64,000 bases of DNA. Origin: Aplysia californica. Lineage: Eukaryota. Within the stretch, counting starts at the first letter, position 1, and every line of letters begins with the position of its first letter. Positions 100-28,733 of this stretch are shown here, in pieces. Under the pieces are notes generated by a model, which was not told where the DNA came from, did no database searches, and saw nothing but the letters and a program-made list of their open reading frames with translations. Both the position numbers and the translations under genes were made by a program. The stretch is taken from contig NW_004797730.1 in NCBI RefSeq assembly GCF_000002075.1, positions 187,902-251,901 on the forward strand, read 5' to 3'.

Positions 100-490
100 T
101 TTTTGCTTGATTAGTAAAATAGAGTTTTTTCGTTTTAAGTACAAATATGAACAATGTCTACAGGGATATGGCTTTTCTTTGGGTTACATAAAAGAATTTC
201 AGTTTTATTTTCATTAAGCTGGAGCTTATTATCAACCATCCACGTTTTGACGTCATTAACGCACAGACCCATGGTAGTAAGCAAGGTTTTAACATCTGAT
301 GGTGAAACAGATTTATATAACTATGTATCGTCTGCGTACATGTATATAATTCAAATTGTGCTTTCTGATCACAGCTCCAAGCGGCTGTGTATAAAACGTA
401 TACAAGATTGGACCCAATACTGAAATTTGAGGCACTCCAAAGTCTAGCTTAAAAATTGACGAAAGAGAGTCGTGCACAACCACATATTGT
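100..490 (-). mobile_element. Degenerate LINE (L2/CR1-type) reverse transcriptase fragment
   Basis: Minus-strand translation gives GVPQ-SVLGPILYTFYTQPLGAVIRKH and, in another frame, YADDT*LY. These are the RT motifs GVPQGSVLGP and YADD, disrupted by a frameshift and a stop. Confidence 0.8.
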
Positions 491-1599
491 ACCAACTGAG
501 CTAACGGTGCGCCCCTGACCGTATTCCACAGATCAAAAGCACATGACAATATGTATCATCAAATGCCAAAATGTACCGGGTTCCCACTGTAACTGTATAC
601 GACACATGTCATGTATGGAGTAATTAATTAGCATTCGCTGTTTTGACTAGTCACACGACTGCTTCTACAAAATCAAACTTTTTCATAAATATGGACTAGT
701 TAATGTGATGCGCGTCCGCATAATCTGAATATACGCATCACTCTGGTGCAAAAAGTCTAGAGTAAAGAGGCCAGTGTCTCCAATGAAAATGTATTTCGTT
801 CTCCTAAAACTACAGCTACAACATAATCGATCAATGAAGACTGGGGATTCCAATTTTGATAAACGTTTGTACTTTATTGTCTACCTTGGTTTTCCGTGCT
901 ACGTTTTACATAGAGAGATAGAATGCACATCACTAGAACTGATGACGAAATACACGACATAAATGGTGGATAAAGCGCTTCCGCTTAAAAGAATTCAAAT
1001 TGGTTGATGCTTCCATTATTACAGGGCGAGTTCTTCATCTTCTCGGGCAAAACATTGCGAATATTATACTCTTGTGTCGATGTCTATCTTGTAAGTTATA
1101 GAAAAGCCACTTTCCATTTAAATTGTCTACTCTTGTCTGTCTCAGAATTTCTCTGGGCATGGCTGTGCTTGGTACTTCATAATCCATATCGTTTCGCAGA
1201 GACTTTGGCGTACACCTCTTCCTCATTTATTGTGGGTGCACTTCCATGCTTTGAAGGTGGTAGCTGTTAGTAGACTAGGGTAAATAAGCACGGTGAAGCC
1301 ATATTTGACTACACTGGGCAACAAAATTGATCTTTTTTTCTGCGGCATGAAGTTTCAGACTTCATATACAGTAATTAGAGGTCGCTGAAACCAAAAATGG
1401 CATCCGTATACGTCAAGTGTTTTTCTCTGTGGCGTAACCACTGTTTTTGCGGTATACAATATCGAATTAGCTGTAATAATAATAAATGGCAACTTTATTC
1501 AGAGTAAGAAACGGCTCCACTCCCCCGAAAATACAGGCATCAAAATCCATGCTTTTTTCATAATAATATTAGGAATGGGTACAACATTATGAATGAGTA

Positions 1600-2792: not shown

Positions 2793-4157
2793 ATGATGAA
2801 ATCTTTAACAAGTTTTACACACGAGGTGCCTCATCCAGAAAATGTTGTGTGGGCGCCTCCCGCATACGATGAGCAGCACCATTTGTTTTTTTCGCACGGG
2901 ACCGTCTTGATTGGTATCGTCGGGTCGTTGATCATTACTGTGGCAGTGGTAGGGAATGTTCTTGTCTGCTTGGCAATTTTCACAGAGCCTATTCTCTCCC
3001 ACAGCAAAAGCAACTTTTTTATCGTGTCCCTGGCAGTTGCTGACCTACTGCTCGCTCTCCTGGTCATGACGTTTGCTTTAGTCAACGACCTGTACGGTTA
3101 CTGGTTGTTTGGAGAAACCTTCTGCTTCATCTGGATGTCTGCAGACGTCATGTGCGAAACTGCGTCCATCTTCAGTATCTGTGTCATTAGTTACGATCGC
3201 CTGATGCAAGTGCAGAAGCCACTACATTATGAGGAGTTCATGACTACTACTCGGGCTCTTTTGATTATTGCTTGTTTGTGGATTTGTTCATTTGTCGTGT
3301 CTTTTGTACCAATATTTCTGGAGTGGCATGAGCTCTCTGTGGAAGAAATCAAGGCCATTTTCAAGGATAACAAAGCAGAAAAGGGAAAAGCCCTCGAAGC
3401 ACACACTTTTTCGTCTGCGCATAACCAAACGTTGGGAGTTAACAAAAAGTCGAACAGAAAACCGGAGTGCCTTTTTGATGTACATTTCACCTATTCGGTC
3501 ATCTATTCCTTTATTTGTTTCTACATCCCGTGCACCTTAATGCTGACAAATTACTTACGCCTGTTCTTAATTGCCAAAACGCACCAGGCCCGGATCCGGA
3601 GCCTCCAAATGACCATCCCTCCACAGCTTAGAGGTCAAGGGGCGAGCTCCTACCGGAACCAGGGAACACAAGGCAGTAAAGCAGCCCGGACTCTCACGAT
3701 CATCACAGGAACTTTCCTGGCGTGCTGGTTGCCTTTCTTTATCATCAACCCAATTGCCGCAGCAGATGAACACCTCATCCCACTGGAATGTTTCATGGTG
3801 ACCATTTGGCTCGGTTATTTCAATTCCTGCGTCAATCCTATCATCTATGGGACGTCCAACTCCAAATTCCGAGCAGCTTTCAAACGACTTTTGCGCTGTC
3901 GTTCAGTAAAGTCAGTTGTAGGCAGCATCTCTCCTGTTTCCCCGGCGTATCGGGCATTTTCGTGGATACGTCCCAGCCGCTTAGACCTGTCCTCAAGTGA
4001 ACACCCTAGTGACGCCTGTGATACAGGACGCGGTAAAAATAGTAAGGGAGGTGATTACGCCACTACTGACCCTACAAAGCCCGATGTCAGCGTCAGCGAA
4101 GAGATAATTTATGCTGGGACTAAGGTGTTCGAAAGCGATACAGCCTTCTCCTCATAA
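2793..4157 (+). CDS. Class A aminergic GPCR, 5-HTB1-like / invertebrate D1 (Dop1)-derived, copy 1 (454 aa, intronless CDS)
   Basis: Intact ORF with 7 hydrophobic segments and GN (TM1), SLAVADLL (TM2), D3.32 in WMSADVMC, DRL, W4.50, FYIP (TM5), CWLPFF (TM6) and WLGYFNS-NPIIY (TM7). Very close to the recalled Aplysia 5-HTB1 sequence. Confidence 0.96.
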   Translation: MMKSLTSFTHEVPHPENVVWAPPAYDEQHHLFFSHGTVLIGIVGSLIITVAVVGNVLVCLAIFTEPILSHSKSNFFIVSLAVADLLLALLVMTFALVNDLYGYWLFGETFCFIWMSADVMCETASIFSICVISYDRLMQVQKPLHYEEFMTTTRALLIIACLWICSFVVSFVPIFLEWHELSVEEIKAIFKDNKAEKGKALEAHTFSSAHNQTLGVNKKSNRKPECLFDVHFTYSVIYSFICFYIPCTLMLTNYLRLFLIAKTHQARIRSLQMTIPPQLRGQGASSYRNQGTQGSKAARTLTIITGTFLACWLPFFIINPIAAADEHLIPLECFMVTIWLGYFNSCVNPIIYGTSNSKFRAAFKRLLRCRSVKSVVGSISPVSPAYRAFSWIRPSRLDLSSSEHPSDACDTGRGKNSKGGDYATTDPTKPDVSVSEEIIYAGTKVFESDTAFSS

Positions 4158-4705: not shown

Positions 4706-6379
4706 TACAAACGCGCATACACNNNNNNNNNNNNNNNNNNNNNNNNNNNNNNNNNNNNNNNNNNNNNNNNNNNNNNNNNNNNNNNNNNNNNNNNNNNNNN
4801 NNNNNNNNNNNNNNNNNNNNNNNNNNNNNNNNNNNNNNNNNNNNNNNNNNNNNNNNNNNNNNNNNNNNNNNNNNNNNNNNNNNNNNNNNNNTGAACCAGG
4901 CACACACCCATGCCTCGTTGCAATTCACCATTACTATAGTGTGTCCTACCTAACTGTGCCACATTGGTAGCTTTCACCTCTCCGTGAAGGAAAATATGAC
5001 TGGCTCCGACTCTATTCAGATTGAGTATGTTTAACGCCCCTTTCTCCAGTGTAGGGTTTTGTAAGAGGTGGGACCTGCAAATCTAACATCCGTATTCTTT
5101 AGGATCGAGCCAAATGGGTACTGATCCTTAAAACACCCGCAAATCAATACGGCTCAGAGTTTCCCTTCGGGGGAATCAAACAAGGGCCATACGTTTTGTG
5201 TTCCGGCATAATACTAACTGAGGTAACGGAGCGCCCCTGACCATATCCCACGGATCAAAAGCACATGACAATATGTATCATCAAATGCCAAAATGCACTG
5301 GGTTCCCACTGTAACTGTATACGACACATGTCATGTATGGGGTAATTAATTAGCTTTCGATGTTTTGACTAGTCACATGACTGCTTCTACAAAATCAAAC
5401 TTTTTCATAAATATGTACTAGTGTGGTGCATGTCCGCATAATCTGAATATACGCATCACTCTGGTGCAAAAAGTCTAGAGTAAAGAGGCCAGTGTCTCCA
5501 ATGAAAATGCATGTCGTTCTCCTAAAACTACAACTACAGCATAATCGATCAATGAAGACTGAGGATTCTAATTTTGATAAACGTTTGTACTTTATTGTCT
5601 ACCTTGGTTTTCCGTGCTACGTTTTACATAGAGAGATAGAATGCACATCACTAGAACTGATGACGAAATACACGACATAAATGGTGGATGAAGGGCTTCC
5701 GCTCAAAAGAATTCAAATTGGTGGGTGTTTACATTATTACTGGGCAAGTTCTTCATCTAATCTGAAAAAACATTGAGAATATTATAATCTTGTCTCGATG
5801 TCTATCTTGTAAGTTATAGAAACGCCACATTTCATTTTAAATGTCTACTCTTGTCTGTGTCAGAATTTCTCTGGGCATGGCTGTGCTTGGTACTTCATAA
5901 TTCTTATCGTTTCGCAGAGAAGTTGGGCGTACATCTCTTCCTAATCTTCAGTGGGTGTACTTCCATGCTTTGTGGGTGGTAGCTGTTAGTTAGTAGACCG
6001 GGGGTAAATAAGCACGGTGAAGCCACATTTCACTAAAAACACTGGACAGCAAAATTGAGCTTTTTTCTGGGGCATGGAGTTTCAGACTTCATGTACAGTA
6101 ATTAGAGGTCGATGAAACAAAAAATGACATCCGTTTTGCTTTATCACGTCAAGTGTTTTTCTCTGTGTCATAACCCCTGTTTTGAGGTACACAATATTGA
6201 ATTAGCTGTAATAATAATAATAATAATAAACGCCAACTTTGTTCAGAGCAAACCGCTCCTCTGTCCCGAAAAATCTGAGGCGTCAAAATCAAAGTTTTTT
6301 TTTCATGTTATGTATAAATAGTGTCAGTCCTCTGTTTCACTATAGCAATGGGTACAACATTATGAATTAGTGTTTTTAA

Positions 6380-7350: not shown

Positions 7351-8142
7351 GATCCTCTTCTGTACTGTGATAACGCTATCGTTACATCGTTTTTTGAACA
7401 TTTTTTTTTCTTTTGGCCTTGAAGCAAAAAAATTTGATAAACCGTTATCAAATAACCCAATTCTGGCTAACTAAAACAATTGGGATTTGAAGTCAATTTG
7501 ATTGAAAATTGTGCTTTCCGCCCTTATGCTTCTACACTACTTTTACAAAATCTCTAAACTCTGTTACTACGACAAAAAGCAGTTTTTAAAGACAATCTAA
7601 TACTGTAGCAAGATTTTTTAAAGAAACTGAAGGCTAAAATGGATAATGGTTTAGATAGATTATACCATTTTTGCTAGACACACACAAAGATATAGATCTA
7701 GATGTGTTTAATTACGTTTGTAGCTCAGAAACATAGGTTTAATTTAACTATTAGTGATAACCTACTAATTTTGGAGGAAAAGTCACACATTGATTAAAGT
7801 TCAACATGTTGTTCTGATTCAATAAAGTGAAGTACTGAATCAAACTAAAGGCTATTCTGTTTGACAATTCCTGAATTTTGTCATATTGACATAAAACCTA
7901 CCACTTTTACATATAGCAAATACTTGACGTGATACACAAAAGCTAATGCCTTGAGCCGCAACATTTGTGTTGATCAATGAAATAGTTTGAAGGTAACGAA
8001 GAAATTCAAAAGAGGTAGCAATTTTAACGGATAACCGTTACCATATACCCCTACTGCACTCAAACGCCTGACAAGTGACGTTGACTATGTTACAATCTCC
8101 TGTTACCAGTTCATAATGACATTAGTTTGAATCACAATAATT

Positions 8143-8580
8143 TGTGAGGCAGCGTGGTAGAATCAGGCACTCGTCAATTTTTGGGCGTGTAGAGTTATTG
8201 GTGTCATCTTAAAGCTAGTTCACTCTTCTTTATTTGAATGAAAAAATATCTATTTATCTTGAATACAAGTCAAGATATTTGCGAATGAAGAAGGTGGAGG
8301 TCACCTGTTTTCAGAGGTAAAATTAGTGAGAAAATTGCCGCCAAAGATTAGTTATTTCCTTAGCTTAAAGAGTCCGTGGTAACTGAAAATTTACATTTTT
8401 TGTTCCATCAACCAACGTTTTTAAAGACAAAACCACACAGAAGTGAGTTCTTGAATGGATATGGAAGGTGTTGAGCCAAAAAACAAAAATTTGATAAAAA
8501 TTCTCAAACTTGGGGAACAATGCAAGTTTCTTCACTTTGATTTTTTTGACAAGAGTCTGATTCCACCACGCTGCCTCACA
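8143..8580. mobile_element. MITE family A (438 bp)
   Basis: ~35-bp TIRs TGTGAGGCAGCGTGGT(G/A)GAATCAGGC(T/A)CTCGTCAA ... TTGAC(G/A)AGAG(C/T)CTGATTCCACCACGCTGCCTCACA; flanked TT/TT; non-coding. Confidence 0.93.
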
Positions 8581-8778
8581 TTTGTTTCCCTCCAGTGTCC
8601 GTGATCTTATGACATGTATAGCTGTATAAACTTCGAACATAAAAAATTTACAAGTACAAGATTGAAACTTACACAGAAACCGCAGTCTTGATCTGAGAAT
8701 TTCACAAGTTTTATTTTCTCTTTCCGTTTCCACCTAGGTGCAACAGACGGTGACAGATCCTTGCTTGTTGTCTTCACG

Positions 8779-9260
8779 ATGAAATCTTTAAAAAGTTCCA
8801 CACACGACGTGCCTCATCCAGAAAATGTTGTGTGGGCGCCTCCCGCATACGATGAACAGCACCACTTGTTTTTTTCGCACGGAACCGTCTTGATTGGTAT
8901 CGTCGGGTCGTTGATCATTACTGTGGCAGTGGTAGGAAATGTTCTTGTGTGCTTGGCAATTTTCACAGAGCCTATTCTCTCCCACAGCAAAAGCAACTTT
9001 TTTATCGTGTCCCTGGCAGTTGCCGACTTACTGCTCGCNNNNNNNNNNNNNNNNNNNNNNNNNNNNNNNNNNNNNNNNNNNNNNNNNNNNNNNNNNNNNN
9101 NNNNNNNNNNNNNNNNNNNNNNNNNNNNNNNNNNNNNNAAAATAGTAAGGGAGGTGATTGCGCCACAGCTGACCCTACAAAGCCCGATGTCAGCGTCAGC
9201 GAAGAGATAATTTACGCTGGGACTAAGGTGTTTGACAGCGATACAGCCTTCTCCTCATAA
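8779..9260 (+). CDS. 5HTB1: Aminergic GPCR copy 2, probably the Aplysia 5-HTB1 locus; middle ~1 kb missing in the gap 9039-9138
   Basis: N-terminus MKSLKSSTHDVPHPE... through TM2 before the gap, and C-terminus NSKGGDCATADPTKPDVSVSEEIIYAGTKVFDSDTAFSS* after it. Both ends match the 5-HTB1 termini as I recall them (not database-verified). Confidence 0.8.
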
Positions 9261-9298
9261 AGCCATTCCTTCTGAAGTAAGCCTGTTCTGAAAATTAT

Positions 9299-9749
9299 TG
9301 TTTGTTTGAATAAGTGTTTTACGGCACCCGCAATTGCATAAGCTCATAGGAGTGCTTGGGCCATATTAAACATTGTCAGTTTGCTAGAAATTTTGAATTT
9401 TTGCCCGAGTGGTGACCGAAGCCTCCTCGTGTTAGATGTTACCTACCACAAGATCAGGGGTGTGGCTGAAAGACAGCAGTAAGAAGGAGCCTAGAAGTAC
9501 CGTTAGCAATAGAAAGACTGCAGAAAGAGTCAGGAGCCTAGAGGAGTAGATAAATAGGAATGGGGGTGGGTGGGGGGGGGAAGTGTAGACGAAAGAATAC
9601 GGCAGAATATGGTTAGAGAGCCGGAAAGGATGGGGAAGGAGAACATTTAGGAGAAGAAAATTTTCCGTCCCTGAGTGATAGGTAATTTTGAACAAGGGAC
9701 GTATTGAATGAGAGTCGAACACAGTAACCCCTTGACCAGAAGAGACCCG
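9299..9749 (-). mobile_element. tRNA-derived SINE, internally deleted, in the 3' flank of copy 2
   Basis: Homologous to 15663-16184; same insertion site as the SINE behind copy 1. Confidence 0.8.
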
Positions 9750-10100
9750 ACTATGAATTAGTAGACTAAAGAAAACGATAAAATAAGAGCGACATAAGGC
9801 ACATGTTCACCCAGGTCAGCAGTCACTAAACAGCGCACGATGTTGGTAAATTATGTACAAACAACAATAGGTAGACCGGGAAAATCAACAGTTGGATGAT
9901 GCATTACGTTTGGAGCTTCTTTGATACCCCCCCCAAAACCCCCCCCCCCAGAAAANNNNNNNNNNNNNNNNNNNNNNNNNNNNNNNNNNNNNNNNNNNNN
10001 NNNNNNNNNNNNNNNNNNNNNNNNNNNNNNNNNNNNNNNNNNNNNNNNNNNNNNNNNNNNNNNNNNNNNNNNNNNNNNNNNNNNNNNNNNNNNNNNNNNN

Positions 10101-10863
10101 TGCTGACAAATTACTTACGCCTGTTCTTAATTGCCAAAACGCACCAAGTCCGGATCCGGAGCCTCCAAATGATCAACCCTCCACAGCTTAGAGGTCAAGG
10201 CGCGAGCTTCTACCGGAACCAGGGAACACAAGGCAGTAAAGCAGCCCGGACTCTCACGATCATCACAGGAACTTTCCTGGCGTGCTGGTTGCCTTTCTTT
10301 ATCATCAACCCAATTGCCGCAGTAGATGAACACCTNNNNNNNNNNNNNNNNNNNNNNNNNNNNNNNNNNNNNNNNNNNNNNNNNNNNNNNNNNNNNNNNN
10401 NNNNNNNNNNNNNNNNNNNNNNNNNNNNNNNNNNNCTTTCTTTATCATCAACCCAATTGCCGCAGTAGATGAACACCTCATCCCACTGGAATGTTTCATG
10501 GTGACCATTTGGCTCCGCTATTTTAACTCTTGCGCCAATGCTATCATCTATTGGGTATTCAACTCCAAATTTCGAGCTGCTTTCAAAAGACTTTTGCACT
10601 TGTATTCAGTAAAGGGAATTGTCAGCAGACTGTCGTTTTGCGCCTCGATTTATCGGGCATTTTCGTGGATACGGCCCAGCCACTTAGTCCTTTCTCTAAG
10701 CGTACACCCTAGTTATGTCTGTGATACAGGACATGATACAAATAGTAAGGAAGATGATTACGTCACAGTTGAACTTACAAAGCCCGATGTCAGCTTCGGC
10801 TTAGAAGAGGTAATTATGATATATTATGCTTGCACAAAGTTTTTCGAAAGCGATACAGTATAG
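10101..10863 (+). pseudogene. GPCR copy 2b: 3'-half fragments (end of TM5 to C-tail) with degenerate TM7; probable pseudogene or mis-assembled copy
   Basis: 10101-10335 encodes LTNYLRLFLIAKTHQVRI...CWLPFFIINPIAAVDEH. 10436-10863 encodes TM7 as WLRYFNSCANAIIYWVF, so WLGY became WLRY and NPxxY became NAxxY. No 5' half is visible and there are gaps at 9956-10100 and 10336-10435. Confidence 0.7.
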
Positions 10864-14480: not shown

Positions 14481-14506
14481 TTCAAGCCTAACAAACATAA
14501 CAAATA

Positions 14507-14944
14507 TGTGAGGTAGCGTGGTGGAATCAGGCTCTCGTCAAAATAATCAAAGTGACGAAATTTGCATTTTTCCGCAAGTTTGTGAATTTTTATCAAATTT
14601 TAGTTTTTTGGCCCAACACCTTTTATGCCCATTAAAGAACTAATTTCTGTGTGGATTTTTCTGAAAAATGTTGATTAAAGGCACAAAAAAAGTAAATTTT
14701 CAGTTACCACAGACTCTTAAGCTAAGGAAAAAAACTCATCTTTGGCGGCCATTTTCTAACTAATTTTACCTCTGAAAACAGGTGACTCCCACCTCCTTCT
14801 TTTGCAAATATCTCGACTTGTATTCAAGATTAATGGATATTTTTTTCATCCGAATAAAGACAAGTGAACAAGCTTTAGGATGATTTCAATAACCCTACAT
14901 GCCCAAAAATTGACGAGAGCCTGATTCCACCACGCTGCCTCACA
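14507..14944. mobile_element. MITE family A
   Basis: Same TIRs, 438 bp, flanked TA/TA, opposite orientation to the 8143 copy. Confidence 0.93.
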
Positions 14945-17688: not shown

Positions 17689-19062
17689 ATGGAATCTTTG
17701 ACCACATTAACACACGAGGTGCCTCATCCAGAAAATGTTGTGTGGGCTCCTCCTGCATACGATGAACAGCACCACTTGTTTTTTTCGCACGGGCCCGTCT
17801 TGATTGGTATCGTCGGGTCGTTGATCATTACTGTGGCAATGGTAGGAAATGTTCTTGTGTGCTTGGCAATTTTCACAGAGCCTATTCTCTCCCACAGCAG
17901 AAGCAACTTTTTTATCGTGTCCCTGGCAGTTGCCGACTTACTGCTCGCTCTCCTGGTCATGACGTTTGCCTTAGTCAACGACCTGTACGGTTACTGGTTG
18001 TTTGGAGAAACCGTCTGCTTCATCTGGATGTCTGCAGACGTGATGTGCGAAACTGCGTCCATCTTCAGTATCTGTGCCATTAGCTACGATCGCTTGAAGC
18101 AAGTACAGAAGCCACTTCATTATGAGGAGTTCATGACTACTACTCGGGCTCTTTTGATAATTGCTTGTTTGTGGATTTGTTCATTTGTCGGGTCTTTTGT
18201 ACCAATATTTCTGGAATGGCATGAGCGATCAGTGGAAGAAATCAAAGCCAATTTCAAAGGTAGCGGTTCGGACAAAGACCGAGTCAAGAAAAAAGCTGCT
18301 GAAGCACAGACGTTTTCGCCCACTTCAAATCAAAGTTCGGGAGCCGTGCAAAAACTGAACACAAAACCCGAGTGTCTTTTCGATGTACACTTCACCTGCT
18401 CGGTTATCTATTCCTTTATTTGTTTTTATATCCCGTGCACAATAATGCTCACGAACTACTTCCGCCTGTTTTTAATTGCCCGTAAACATCGGCACCGGAT
18501 AAACAGCATCAAACCCCAAGTGAATGGCGGTGTACAACAGCCCAGAAGTCAAAGGACTAGCTTCAACCGGAAATGTGGAGTGCGTGGCAGTAAAGCAGCC
18601 CGGACTCTCACGATCATCACAGGAACTTTCCTGGCGTGCTGGCTGCCCTTCTTCATCATCAACCCAATTGCTGCAATAGATGAGCACCTCATCCCATTGG
18701 AATATTTCATGGTGACCATATGGCTTGGCTATTTCAATTCTTGCGTCAATCCCATCATTTATGGGACTTCCAACTCTAAATTCCGAGCTGCTTTCAAACG
18801 CCTTCTCGGTTGTCGTTCTGTTAGGGGAAATGTTCGCGGCTTCTCCCCCCGCAGATCTATTTATAGGGCGTTCTCGTGGATACAGCCCAGCCGCTTAGAC
18901 TTCACGCCAAGTCGACGCTGTAGTAGGACGGTTAGCTGTAGTTTCCACTCAGATACACGAGAGGTGGACAAGAACAGCGATGGAGGCAATAGTGTCAAAG
19001 CTGAACCCTCAAAGTCCGAGGTCATCATAACTGAACAGGAATCCTCATATAACTCCTCCTAA
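17689..19062 (+). CDS. Aminergic GPCR copy 3 (457 aa, intronless CDS)
   Basis: Intact ORF with the same 7TM motifs as copy 1; distinct ECL2, ICL3 and C-tail. Confidence 0.95.
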   Translation: MESLTTLTHEVPHPENVVWAPPAYDEQHHLFFSHGPVLIGIVGSLIITVAMVGNVLVCLAIFTEPILSHSRSNFFIVSLAVADLLLALLVMTFALVNDLYGYWLFGETVCFIWMSADVMCETASIFSICAISYDRLKQVQKPLHYEEFMTTTRALLIIACLWICSFVGSFVPIFLEWHERSVEEIKANFKGSGSDKDRVKKKAAEAQTFSPTSNQSSGAVQKLNTKPECLFDVHFTCSVIYSFICFYIPCTIMLTNYFRLFLIARKHRHRINSIKPQVNGGVQQPRSQRTSFNRKCGVRGSKAARTLTIITGTFLACWLPFFIINPIAAIDEHLIPLEYFMVTIWLGYFNSCVNPIIYGTSNSKFRAAFKRLLGCRSVRGNVRGFSPRRSIYRAFSWIQPSRLDFTPSRRCSRTVSCSFHSDTREVDKNSDGGNSVKAEPSKSEVIITEQESSYNSS

Positions 19063-21618: not shown

Positions 21619-22092
21619 CGTCGTCTTGTCCTGTATTTTTTCCCTCTGTCTGCCTCTGCCTCTGCCTCTGCCTCTGCCTCTCTTTCCAATCTTTGTTTAT
21701 TGAAGTGTTATGATCCATAATGTTCTAGGGAAAGAATACAGCAGTGGTTTTCCCTTGCCTTCTGCTAGATTTGTGTACGGTTTACTCCACTAGCCTTTGT
21801 CCAAAAGGACTAACCCACAAGGCAGTGGCGGCAGGTGGCAGGTTTCGGCGCCTACCTCTCGCCTGACAGTCTCTTTACTGAGCACATGAGGTATTTTATA
21901 GAGACAGGATTGCCACCACCCTGTTCCACCTCGCACTCCAAGACAACAGACACACAGACATAATATCATAAGGTATCAAAAGAAGTAAAGCCCAATTTGC
22001 AACTACCTTCCCCCCCTCCTTTTATTCCCCTTGAATGTCTTGCAAGTTTCGTTGAGTGAGACTGAGATGCACTTTGGGGAAGACAATAAAAT

Positions 22093-22530
22093 TGTGAGGC
22101 AGCGTGGTGGAATCAGGCTCTCGTCAAAATAATCAAAGTGAAGAAACTTGCATTTTTTCGCAGGTTTGTGAATTTTTATCAAAGTTTTGATTTTTGGCTC
22201 AACACCTTTCATGCCCATTAAAGAACTCATTTCTGTGTCGATTTTTTTGCAAAACGTTGATTTAAGGCACAACATAATGTAAATTTTCAGTTACCACGAA
22301 CTCTTAAGCTAAGGAAATAGCTAATCTTTGGTGGCCATTTTCTCACTAATTTTACTTCTGAAAACAGGTGACCCCCACCTCCTTCATTCGAAAATATCTC
22401 AGCGTGTATTCAAGATAAATGGATATTGTTTTCATCCAAATAAAGATAAGTGAACAAGCTTTAAGATGATACCAATAACTCCACATGCCCAAAAATTGAC
22501 GAGAGCCTGATTCCACCACGCTGCCTCACA
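22093..22530. mobile_element. MITE family A
   Basis: Perfect TIRs, 438 bp. Confidence 0.93.
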
Positions 22531-23873
22531 ACTATTGAAAAAGCGAAAACATGTTCAAGAGTAAAAGTACAATAATGTAGTGCAGAGCCCTGATGAAAGC
22601 TCCAGTGTCACTGTAGTATGTTAACACCTTCACCGAACAGATTACTTCCGGAAACGAAGGTTTCTTTCTTTTGACCAGCATCAATAAAACGTATTTCCAA
22701 ATACAAATTTCAATACAGTTCTAGGTCATTTTAATTATAGAGGAACCACATTTTCTATGGTAAGCCCTGCTCCGGGCTCTTATTCGCCCTCTCTACAAGA
22801 AGCCTTTATAGCAGAAGGGTCCTGCCACTTTCTCAGAACGTTCAGTTTATCGCGGAAAAAAAGCTCTCCAGGGTGGGTATTGTCGTCAGCAATTTTTTGC
22901 CCCCAGTGCAAAGAGCAAAGAGAAGTATCGAGTACGCATTAAAATAAAACGAATTTCAAATACACAGATTGTTCAGTTGCTCAGGATAAAATGGAAAACG
23001 GGAGCAACAAGTATTGCCAGAACGTGGCTGTTAGACTTCATACACTTCAAAAGCCAATGTCTACTCAGCTCAAATCGATGACAATATCATGTTACCGATT
23101 TACGTATTTGCAGAAATAAAAAGTGTTGTAATGATGATGTATAGGCCAAAAGCTTTTGAAATCAGGAAAATCATTTTGAAATACGCTCTCTTTGGGTTTT
23201 TTAAAATATTTTCACTTTTTCCTAGATTGAATCCTGGCTCCAAAAAAATAGAAATTAGAGAAGTGTTTAGTTTTAGTAGAGGTTTTACGGCGCTCGCAAC
23301 TGCATAAGGTCATATGAGCGCCAGAAGATTAGAGGTGTTACAAGAGAGTAACAAACATAAAAAAGAAGGAGGGGAGATAAGGACGATATATTTTTTTATA
23401 GGAAAGAAGAAGCAAACCACACCAGAGCACCCGCCAACCACCCACTAGAGAAGTGGCCAAACGGAAAAGTAATAGGCCTGGAGAAGAAATATGCCATTCT
23501 TTTATGCCAAGGAGATTATACTAGTTGTTATAGCGTATGTGAAGCAACACAGCAGATGGGTAATGCTTGGATAACTGACTACATGTATACATGTATTATT
23601 TAGCCCTAACGAAAAAGCTTCAGTATGTCACAGTATGTGAGCCAGAGGCCAAACCTGTACAGGTAGCACTAGCTCCTATTTGGTTGGGTTTTTAAAAAAA
23701 GGAAAACGTTCTGGTACTTGTGCTGTAGATAATATGTACGTCAATGAGCGCATGTAAGACAAACTATTAGTTCAGAGCCGAATAAATAGGCCTATTTTGC
23801 TATCCAGACTAGACATCTTGGCTGCTTCTAAAAGATCAAGATCAAATAGTTCACCATGGTATGCTTCTGCCTT

Positions 23874-27389: not shown

Positions 27390-28733
27390 ATGGAAACTTC
27401 TGAAAAGAGTGCACATGGATTGCCCCACACAGAAAATGTTGTGTGGGCGCCTCCCGCATACGATGAACAGCACCACTTGTTTTTTTCTCACGGAACCGTC
27501 TTGATTGGTATCGTCGGGTCGTTGATCATTACTGTGGCAGTGGTAGGAAATATTCTTGTGTGCTTGGCAATTTTCACAGAGCCTATTCTCTCCCACAGCA
27601 AAAGCAACTTTTTTATCGTGTCCCTGGCAGTTGCCGACTTACTGCTCGCTCTCCTGGTCATGACGTTTGCTTTAGTCAACGACCTGTACGGTTACTGGTT
27701 GTTTGGAGAAACCGTCTGCTTCATCTGGATGTCTGCAGACGTCATGTGCGAAACAGCGTCCATCTTCAGTATCTGTGTCATTAGTTACGATCGCCTGAAG
27801 CAAGTGCAGAAGCCCCTACTTTACGAGGAATTTATGACTGCCACTCGGGCTCTTTCGATTATTGCTTCATTGTGGATTTGTTCATTTGTCGTGTCTTTTG
27901 TACCAATATTTCTGGAATGGCATGAGCTCTCGGTGGAAGAAATCAAAGCCATTTTCAAGGGTCGCAATCCATACAAAGACACGGTCAAGGAAAATGTCAC
28001 CAATGTACATAAGCCTAATTTTTCTTCTGTACTCAAACAAACTTTGAGAACTGAACAAAAAGTGACCACAAAACCCGAGTGTCTTTTTGACGTGCATTTC
28101 ACCTACTCCGTCGTCTATTCCTTCATTTGTTTCTACATACCGTGCACCTTAATGCTGACAAATTACTTACGCCTCTTTTTAATTGCCCGAAAACATCGGC
28201 ACCGGATCAAGAGCCTCGAGAAGACCAGCCTTCCACAGCCCGGCGATGAAGGGCCACGCTCCCACCGTAAACGCTCATCACAAGGCAGTAAAGCAGCCCG
28301 GACTCTCACGATCATCACAGGAACTTTCATGGCGTGCTGGTTGCCTTTCTTTATCATCAACCCAATTGCCGCAGTAGATGAACACCTCATCCCACTGGAA
28401 TGTTTCATGGTGACCATTTGGCTCGGTTATTTTAATTCTTGCATCAATCCCATTATCTATGGGACGTCCAACTCCAAATTCCGAGCAGCTTTCAAACGAC
28501 TTCTGCGCTGTCGTTCTGTAAGGGAAAACGTTGGAAACGTCACCCGCAATAGTTCGGTGTACAGGGCGTTCTCATGGATACGACCCAGCCTCATAGAGGA
28601 AGGCTTAACACAAGGCCAATGCTGTAGCAGTAGTCGTCGCGCCTTTGACAAAGGACAAGATCAAACCAGCGTTGGGGTTGATTACGTCATAGATGATTTC
28701 CCAGCACCCCAGGCCATCATCGCAGAACTTTGA
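27390..28733 (+). CDS. Aminergic GPCR copy 4 (447 aa, intronless CDS)
   Basis: Intact ORF. The ATG at 27390 is homologous to the starts of the other copies (the ORF-track start at 27363 is a GTG). All 7TM motifs present. Confidence 0.95.
   Translation: METSEKSAHGLPHTENVVWAPPAYDEQHHLFFSHGTVLIGIVGSLIITVAVVGNILVCLAIFTEPILSHSKSNFFIVSLAVADLLLALLVMTFALVNDLYGYWLFGETVCFIWMSADVMCETASIFSICVISYDRLKQVQKPLLYEEFMTATRALSIIASLWICSFVVSFVPIFLEWHELSVEEIKAIFKGRNPYKDTVKENVTNVHKPNFSSVLKQTLRTEQKVTTKPECLFDVHFTYSVVYSFICFYIPCTLMLTNYLRLFLIARKHRHRIKSLEKTSLPQPGDEGPRSHRKRSSQGSKAARTLTIITGTFMACWLPFFIINPIAAVDEHLIPLECFMVTIWLGYFNSCINPIIYGTSNSKFRAAFKRLLRCRSVRENVGNVTRNSSVYRAFSWIRPSLIEEGLTQGQCCSSSRRAFDKGQDQTSVGVDYVIDDFPAPQAIIAEL

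What the first reader, a model, noticed from the sequence alone, without database searches (positions are those of the whole stretch)
3144..3518. Remodelled binding pocket: second acidic residue E3.36 and loss of catechol serines (Y5.42, C5.46)
Seen in all three intact copies: TM3 reads D3.32-V-M-C-E3.36-T (GAA at 3156-3158), where aminergic receptors normally have C or S. TM5 reads xSV(I/V)YSFICFYIP, giving Y5.42, S5.43 and C5.46 in place of the S/S/S triad that binds catechol hydroxyls in D1 receptors. W6.48, F6.51, F6.52, N6.55 and Y7.43 are retained, and DRY is DRL. Established: a second acidic pocket residue marks receptors for di-cationic amines (D5.42 in H2 and diamine TAARs, E5.46 in H3/H4). 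Inference: the native ligand may be neither dopamine nor 5-HT but a diamine, histamine-like or polyamine-type molecule.
Basis: partly seen in the sequence, partly recalled or inferred. Interest (0 to 1): 0.82.

Follow-up and report, generated by a model that had tools for sequence, protein, structure and literature searches.

The report
Sea-hare orphan amine receptor, remodelled pocket
These are the known but still orphan 'B receptors' of the sea hare Aplysia, copies of a dopamine-receptor gene once mistaken for serotonin receptors, and their binding pocket has residues seen in no relative we could find, which suggests a ligand other than dopamine and says which mutations to test.

Summary
Observation confirmed. 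D3.32, E3.36 (3156-3158), Y5.42, S5.43, C5.46 and DRL are present in the three intact copies. E3.36, Y5.42 and C5.46 each occur in 0 of 252 aminergic relatives. The locus is known: it is the Aplysia californica B-receptor cluster (Swiss-Prot 5HTB1/5HTB2; AplB3/B5/B4 of PMC5176290). That paper calls them D1-derived, attributes the 1995 serotonin data to endogenous receptors, and found no 5-HT response for B2 or B4. No orthologue was found outside this species. (1) TM1-4 is homogenised by gene conversion, so three E3.36 copies are not independent evidence; TM5 is under real purifying selection. (2) Position 3.36 lies one turn below D3.32, and in a solved relative it binds the same amine, whereas known di-cation receptors use a remote TM5 acid. 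(3) The pocket is not significantly more changed than the rest of the core (p=0.18). Best reading: an orphan receptor for a non-catechol amine, with both acids on one cationic group (0.5). The diamine/histamine reading stays possible (0.2). The scan's earlier notes concern only this same DNA.

The parts
2793..4157 (+). Copy 1: intact single-exon class A GPCR, 454 aa = AplB3 of Farah et al. 2016; 94.7% identical to Q16950 (5HTB1_APLCA), 78.7% to Q16951, 42% to Aplysia Dop1
   Evidence: S5 Table coordinates 2842-4102 in the contig that begins at window base 1
3144..3146 (+). D3.32, the conserved amine-binding aspartate (D in 251/252 relatives)
3156..3158 (+). E3.36 (GAA); S/C/T/V/A in all 252 relatives; TCT or AGT in the Aplysia Dop1 genes
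3195..3203 (+). DRL in place of DRY (L3.51 in 3/252 relatives; NRL in Q16951)
3495..3518 (+). TM5 pocket face: S5.39 (Ala in Dop1), Y5.42, S5.43, C5.46; TM5 under purifying selection between paralogues
3726..3818 (+). TM6/TM7 pocket: W6.48, F6.51, F6.52, N6.55 and Y7.43 retained; I7.39 replaces Dop1 Thr
8779..9260 (+). Gap-interrupted copy (N at 9039-9138, not filled). Its readable N- and C-terminal parts match Q16950 at 98.7% and 100%, so it is probably the true 5HTB1 locus. TM3 and TM5 are not readable here.
10103..10860 (+). Two further fragments between gaps (10103-10335, 10438-10860). The second has R7.42, A for P7.50 and a diverged tail, so it is probably a decaying copy.
17689..19062 (+). 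Copy 2: intact, 457 aa = AplB5; E3.36 at 18049-18051; C5.38 instead of Y
27390..28733 (+). Copy 3: intact, 447 aa from the ATG = AplB4, the copy cloned and found unresponsive to 5-HT in Sf9 cells; E3.36 at 27750-27752

Best explanation
The cluster encodes functional, orphan class A GPCRs. They arose in the Aplysia lineage from an intronless invertebrate Dop1 (D1-like) gene, went through a burst of change, and were then amplified in tandem. They still bind a cationic amine through D3.32 and Y7.43, with the aromatic cage (W6.48, F6.51, F6.52) intact. The catechol sub-site is gone: S5.42 became a bulky Tyr that is inferred to fill the space of the ring hydroxyls, and S5.46 became Cys. E3.36 replaces the serine that normally helps to hold the ligand's amine. 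The most likely role of E3.36 is as a second anchor, with D3.32, for one cationic group (ammonium, or a delocalised guanidinium or imidazolium) at the floor of a shortened pocket. The ligand is thus a non-catechol amine, probably smaller or differently oriented than dopamine. Shown: residues, rarity, ancestry, copy number, selection on TM5. Published: CNS expression by RT-PCR, no 5-HT response in one assay. Inferred: side-chain geometry, ligand class, G-protein coupling.
For: Closest relatives are molluscan Dop1 at 41-46%, in the database and in the genome. The B clade has 100/100 support and a stem of 1.3-1.45 substitutions per site. Core dN/dS between paralogues is about 0.1 and TM5 dN/dS 0.03-0.12, so the genes are functional and Y5.42/S5.43/C5.46 are kept across dS 0.6-2.0. 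D3.32, W6.48, F6.51, F6.52, N6.55 and Y7.43 are retained. S3.36 hydrogen-bonds the agonist's own amine in the octopamine beta2 receptor (PMC12696353). In an ideal-helix rotamer model, 49% of Asp(i)/Glu(i+4) pairs put oxygens within 5.6 A, close enough to share one NH3+. S5.42/S5.46 bind the dopamine hydroxyls. B2 and B4 gave no 5-HT response.
Against: No ligand has been measured. The Sf9 test read out PKC translocation only (a Gq-type readout) and used only 5-HT, so a Gs-coupled 5-HT or dopamine response is not excluded. The helix model is idealised and also allows wide spacing (51% of pairs over 5.6 A). Pocket changes are not enriched over the rest of the core (5/20 against 9/71, p=0.18), so some may have been fixed under relaxed constraint.
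Confidence: 0.5

Rival explanations
1. Di-cation receptor: D3.32 and E3.36 each hold one charged nitrogen of a short diamine, histamine or agmatine lying along TM3, a convergent alternative to the D3.32/D5.42 motif.
For: Second pocket acids do mark di-cation receptors (PMC4695389). Carboxyl-carbon spacing in the helix model spans 4.4-10.2 A, which brackets the N-N distance of putrescine (6.3 A) and cadaverine (7.5 A). Polyamine TAARs use several different second sites (PMC8546428, PMC12476453).
Against: Every precedent read places the second acid away from D3.32 (5.42, 5.46, 6.58, 7.36), none at 3.36. Here 5.42, 5.46 and 6.58 are Tyr, Cys and Ala. Position 3.36 normally serves the first amine. 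H2-like proteins with D5.42/T5.46/Y6.51 turned up as a separate group among the hits (P0173, P0206, P0214, P0222), and the B receptors share none of those residues. Histamine is a transmitter across gastropods (own knowledge), while these receptors were found only in Aplysia.
Confidence: 0.2
2. They remain receptors for a classical monoamine (5-HT or dopamine, perhaps tyramine) with altered pharmacology. E3.36 and N6.55 would supply the polar contacts lost from TM5, and signalling would run through a G protein not read out by the PKC assay.
For: N6.55 and S5.43 are kept. Serotonin receptors also lack the full serine triad (own knowledge). Swiss-Prot still names them 5-HT receptors. The negative test covered one ligand and one pathway.
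Against: The original 5-HT data were explained by endogenous receptors (PMC5176290). Aplysia keeps intact Dop1 genes with the canonical pocket (three loci on C245). Tyr at 5.42 is unseen in 252 relatives.
Confidence: 0.15
3. The pocket is partly self-occupied (E3.36 bonded to Y5.42 or W6.48), and the receptors act without a small amine ligand, as constitutively active or modulatory GPCRs, or bind a non-amine ligand.
For: Activation-related positions also changed on the B stem: DRL/NRL, D6.30 to G, G6.38 to T, and three residues at 3.41-3.43. Divergence is general rather than pocket-focused (p=0.18).
Against: D3.32, Y7.43 and the aromatic cage are invariant in all readable intact copies, which is expected if an amine is still bound.
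Confidence: 0.15

Closest known systems
Aplysia 'B receptors' Ap5-HTB1/Ap5-HTB2 (Q16950, Q16951; AplB1-B7 of Farah et al. 2016, PMC5176290)
   Same: This is that cluster: copy 1 = AplB3, copy 2 = AplB5, copy 3 = AplB4. Q16950 and Q16951 carry the same E3.36, Y5.42, S5.43 and C5.46.
   Different: Nothing in identity. The pocket residues are not discussed in the passages I read (Li 1995 and Nagakura 2010 were not available to me).
Invertebrate Dop1 / D1-like dopamine receptors (Aplysia Q29XY7)
   Same: Nearest relatives (41-46%), intronless; share D3.32, S5.43, W6.48, F6.51, F6.52, N6.55, Y7.43 and the TM6 end FFIINPI.
   Different: S3.36 to E, A5.39 to S, S5.42 to Y, S5.46 to C, T7.39 to I, DRY to DRL, D6.30 to G; long stem branch; tandem expansion.
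Di-cation receptors: zebrafish TAAR13/14, histamine H2 (D5.42), H3/H4 (E5.46), lamprey TAAR365/TAAR348 (E7.36, E6.58)
   Same: Two acidic side chains face the orthosteric pocket. The TAARs are also a tandemly expanded lineage derived from a neurotransmitter receptor.
   Different: There the second acid is remote, on TM5, 6 or 7; here it is i+4 on TM3. There is no phylogenetic link, and B receptors have F6.51, not Y6.51.

Membership tests
Class A (rhodopsin-like) aminergic GPCR | 7tm_1 fold with D3.32, W6.48, Y7.43 and NPxxY | tested here: met
   Pfam 7tm_1 at 1e-57; residues; model with seven helices, best Foldseek hits beta1AR, beta2AR and D1R
Aplysia B receptors (Ap5-HTB1/B2 family) | Sequence identity and locus match to Q16950/Q16951 and to the published AplB loci | tested here: met
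   70-95% identity; published primers and coordinates map to the three copies
Dop1/D1-like dopamine receptors (by descent) | Nearest relatives and tree placement are Dop1-type | tested here: inconclusive
   Nearest by score in the database and the genome. Grouped with heterobranch Dop1 under LG+C20 (SH-aLRT 100, quick tree). Unresolved under LG+G4, where sister-to-ApDop1 has p-AU 0.03 and a position outside all Dop1/D1 is not rejected (p 0.38).
Dop1/D1-like dopamine receptors (by function) | S5.42/S5.43/S5.46 catechol triad and S3.36 | tested here: not met
   Y/S/C and E
Dop1/D1-like dopamine receptors (by function) | Dopamine-evoked cAMP rise | not testable with these tools
   No dopamine assay of B receptors found in the papers read
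Serotonin receptors | Activation by 5-HT | not testable with these tools
   Published negative for B2 and B4 in one Gq-type assay; the 1995 positive result was attributed to endogenous receptors (PMC5176290)
Di-cation receptors with the D3.32 + TM5 acid motif | Asp5.42 or Glu5.46 | tested here: not met
   Y5.42 and C5.46; motif defined in PMC4695389
Polyamine TAAR-like binding | Y6.51 plus E7.36 or E6.58 | tested here: not met
   F6.51, A6.58 and M7.36; motifs from PMC8546428 and PMC12476453

The most novel reading that the evidence does not exclude
The B receptors are a sea-hare-specific family of di-cation (diamine, agmatine or histamine) receptors that evolved from a dopamine receptor through a D3.32/E3.36 two-acid motif on one helix, a solution not found in the papers read here, and serve a reproductive or chemical-signalling role.
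Probability: 0.2. Interest if true: 0.75.

Novelty: new variant of a known kind. Interest (0 to 1): 0.45.

Why it matters
The B receptors were among the first Aplysia 'serotonin receptors' cloned and are still annotated that way, but the literature read here leaves them without a ligand. The pocket gives a structural reason why neither dopamine nor 5-HT need work, and it names the residues (E3.36, Y5.42, C5.46, I7.39) and the ligand classes to test. If a new ligand is found, this would be a clean case of a neurotransmitter receptor being repurposed, with the parent Dop1 still in the same genome as a control, and it would add a new pocket type to aminergic pharmacology. The reach is limited: one species so far, and the genes, their number and their D1 origin are published.

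Tried and rejected
Tissue expression therefore rests on the literature only.
2) Li 1995, and guessed PMC ids for Barbas 2003 and Lee 2009, and Angers 1998 were not held; Nagakura 2010 was not looked up by id. Their content is cited only through PMC5176290 and PMC10136630.
3) Literature searches for E3.36 or Y5.42 in aminergic receptors gave nothing usable.
4) Misnumbering of TM3 or TM5: rejected (gap-free alignments, unbroken helices).
5) Sequencing error or pseudogene artefact: rejected; the same residues are in independent cDNA-derived Q16950/Q16951 and core dN/dS is about 0.1.
6) 'Three copies are three independent conservations of E3.36': rejected because of gene conversion in TM1-4.
7) Pocket-focused adaptive remodelling: not shown (p=0.18).
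8) Exact sister group: not resolved, model-dependent.
9) N stretches were left unfilled; only readable flanks were compared.

Full report
1. Observation. The finding lies in a 454-aa single-exon ORF at 2793-4157 (+), a 7tm_1 GPCR. With R3.50, P5.50, P6.50 and P7.50 as anchors, the pocket reads D3.32 (3144), E3.36 (GAA, 3156-3158), S5.39, Y5.42 (3504), S5.43, C5.46 (3516), W6.48, F6.51, F6.52, N6.55, I7.39 and Y7.43, with DRL at 3195-3203. The TM3 and TM5 alignments to human D1 and alpha1A have no gaps. The AlphaFold model of copy 3 has continuous TM3 (106-140) and TM5 (237-279) helices, and its best structural matches are beta-adrenergic and D1 receptors. The numbering therefore holds. The copies at 17689-19062 and 27390-28733 have the same residues. 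Among 252 non-B aminergic relatives from two searches, position 3.36 is S 137, C 102, T 7, V 5, A 1 and never acidic; 5.42 is never Tyr; 5.46 is never Cys.

2. Identity. The window is Aplysia californica DNA. Copy 1 clusters with Swiss-Prot Q16950 (5HTB1_APLCA, 94.7%) and is 78.7% identical to Q16951 (5HTB2). Both cDNA-derived proteins carry E3.36, Y5.42, S5.43 and C5.46, so the residues are not an assembly error. The genome search shows a tandem array on one scaffold: a Q16951-like locus and another intact copy just upstream of the window, copy 1, gap-interrupted pieces at 8779-10860, copies 2 and 3, and a frameshifted copy on another scaffold. Farah et al. 2016 (PMC5176290) already describe seven 'Aplysia-specific B receptors'. 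They state that the 1995 serotonin data were later explained by endogenous receptors of the host cells, that the receptors probably derive from the Aplysia D1 receptor, that most are expressed in the CNS, and that B2 and B4 did not translocate PKC Apl II in response to 10 uM 5-HT. Their primers and coordinates make copy 1 = AplB3, copy 2 = AplB5 and copy 3 = AplB4. The B3 primers also fit the B6 copy, so expression of copy 1 itself is not proven. The readable ends of the gapped copy at 8779-9260 match Q16950 better than copy 1 does; the gaps were left unfilled. A review gives the reproductive system for B1 and the nervous system for B2 (PMC10136630).

3. Distribution and ancestry. The word search and the exhaustive profile search of 1.84 billion representatives found no B-type protein outside A. 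californica: scores fall from 943 and 454 bits (B) to 328 (a sacoglossan Dop1). Other sea hares may simply be missing from those libraries. The B proteins form one clade (100/100) on a very long stem (1.3-1.45 substitutions per site against 0.01-0.2 at the tips). Under a mixture model they join heterobranch Dop1. Under LG+G4 their position is unresolved; sister-to-ApDop1 is weakly rejected (p 0.03) and a position outside all Dop1/D1 is not rejected (p 0.38). Canonical Dop1 genes with S3.36 and the full serine triad persist at three loci on another scaffold, so the B genes were free to change.

4. How much does conservation among copies mean? Across the core, dN/dS between paralogues is about 0.1, so these are maintained genes. 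But silent divergence is uneven: dS is 0.13-0.17 in TM1-4 against 0.6-1.5 in TM5 and about 1 in the C-tail. Synonymous differences are 8-10% of codons in TM1-4 against 26-47% in TM5 (Fisher p 0.001, 0.006, 3e-6). TM1-4 has been homogenised, most simply by gene conversion, so E3.36 in three copies counts as little more than one observation, plus Q16951. TM5 is the better evidence: Y5.42, S5.43 and C5.46 are invariant across dS 0.6-2.0 with dN/dS 0.03-0.12. Of positions at least 90% conserved in invertebrate Dop1, 5 of 20 pocket and 9 of 71 non-pocket positions changed on the B stem (p=0.18). The pocket changes are S3.36E, A5.39S, S5.42Y, S5.46C and T7.39I; others include D6.30G, G6.38T and 3.41-3.43. 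The pocket is changed at key sites, but not shown to be changed more than the rest.

5. Mechanism. In D1 structures the dopamine hydroxyls bind S5.42, S5.43, N6.55 and S5.46, and in the octopamine beta2 receptor S5.42A or S5.46A nearly abolishes octopamine potency. Replacing S5.42 with Tyr and S5.46 with Cys should therefore remove high-potency catechol or phenol agonism (inference). The amine end is intact. Position 3.36 is different. It is i+4 from D3.32 on the same face, and in the octopamine beta2 structure S3.36 hydrogen-bonds the agonist's own amine. In an ideal-helix rotamer model the C-alpha atoms are 6.3 A apart; 49% of Asp/Glu rotamer pairs can share one ammonium, 32% leave 5.6-8 A and 19% more. 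The extended N-N distances are 5.0 A (diaminopropane), 6.3 A (putrescine) and 7.5 A (cadaverine). Geometry thus neither needs nor excludes a short di-cation. I rank: one cationic group held by both acids in a shortened, non-catechol pocket 0.5; true di-cation ligand 0.2; classical monoamine through an untested pathway 0.15; ligand-free or non-amine 0.15.

6. Comparison with what is known. The genes are members of a described family (B receptors). They fail the sequence test for dopamine-type function and for the known di-cation motifs. The pocket itself was not discussed in the passages I could read, and a text search for E3.36 or Y5.42 in aminergic receptors gave nothing usable; Li 1995 and Nagakura 2010 were not available, so prior mention cannot be excluded.

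8. Verdict. A real and rare pocket in a known orphan receptor cluster. It makes a small but old open question directly testable, while the specific diamine claim has modest support. New variant of a known kind; interest 0.45.

Noticed in passing
L012 (G000:C81:355109-356104, - strand): Another intronless, highly diverged D1-like GPCR in the same genome (about 417 aa, 31% to copy 1) with E instead of D at 3.32, R at 3.28 and no TM5 serine triad; a second remodelled orphan.
   Followed up: partly
L006, L007, L008 (G000:C245:76065-122619): Three Dop1 loci on one scaffold: two identical in the matched protein region 6 kb apart (possibly an assembly duplicate) and one inverted copy; the two protein types are about 77% identical. 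RefSeq names one '5-hydroxytryptamine receptor 2-like' although its pocket is canonical Dop1.
   Followed up: partly
window 2793-4157 and L002: RefSeq model XP_005105304.2 (925 aa) fuses the upstream copy and copy 1 into one protein; probably an annotation artefact.
   Followed up: partly
L021:8461-9345 (G000:C460:176454-177344): The genomic locus matching Q16951 at 97% has R instead of G at 7.42 and P for T in TM5, and both the 'B1' and 'B2' primer pairs of Farah et al. map to it, so B1/B2 naming differs between sources.
   Followed up: partly
window 10438-10860: Diverged 3' fragment with R7.42 and NAIIY for NPIIY; likely a decaying copy.
   Followed up: partly
L009 (G000:C1008:133897-134391, - strand): AplB7: frameshifted 5' part and a stop in ECL2, but still E3.36; a pseudogene on another scaffold.
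   Followed up: partly
window 490-1485 and 5212-6220; 14502-14944, 8135-8586 and 22089-22537: Non-coding repeats of 0.45-1 kb (87-90% identical, some inverted) between the gene copies; remnants of the duplication units or a transposon.
   Followed up: no
P0071, P0074, P0068 (Littorina saxatilis), P0042 (Elysia crispata): Other gastropods also carry extra, fast-evolving Dop1 paralogues with partly eroded pockets (A5.42, I6.55; C5.42, G5.46), so Dop1 duplication with pocket drift recurs.
   Followed up: no
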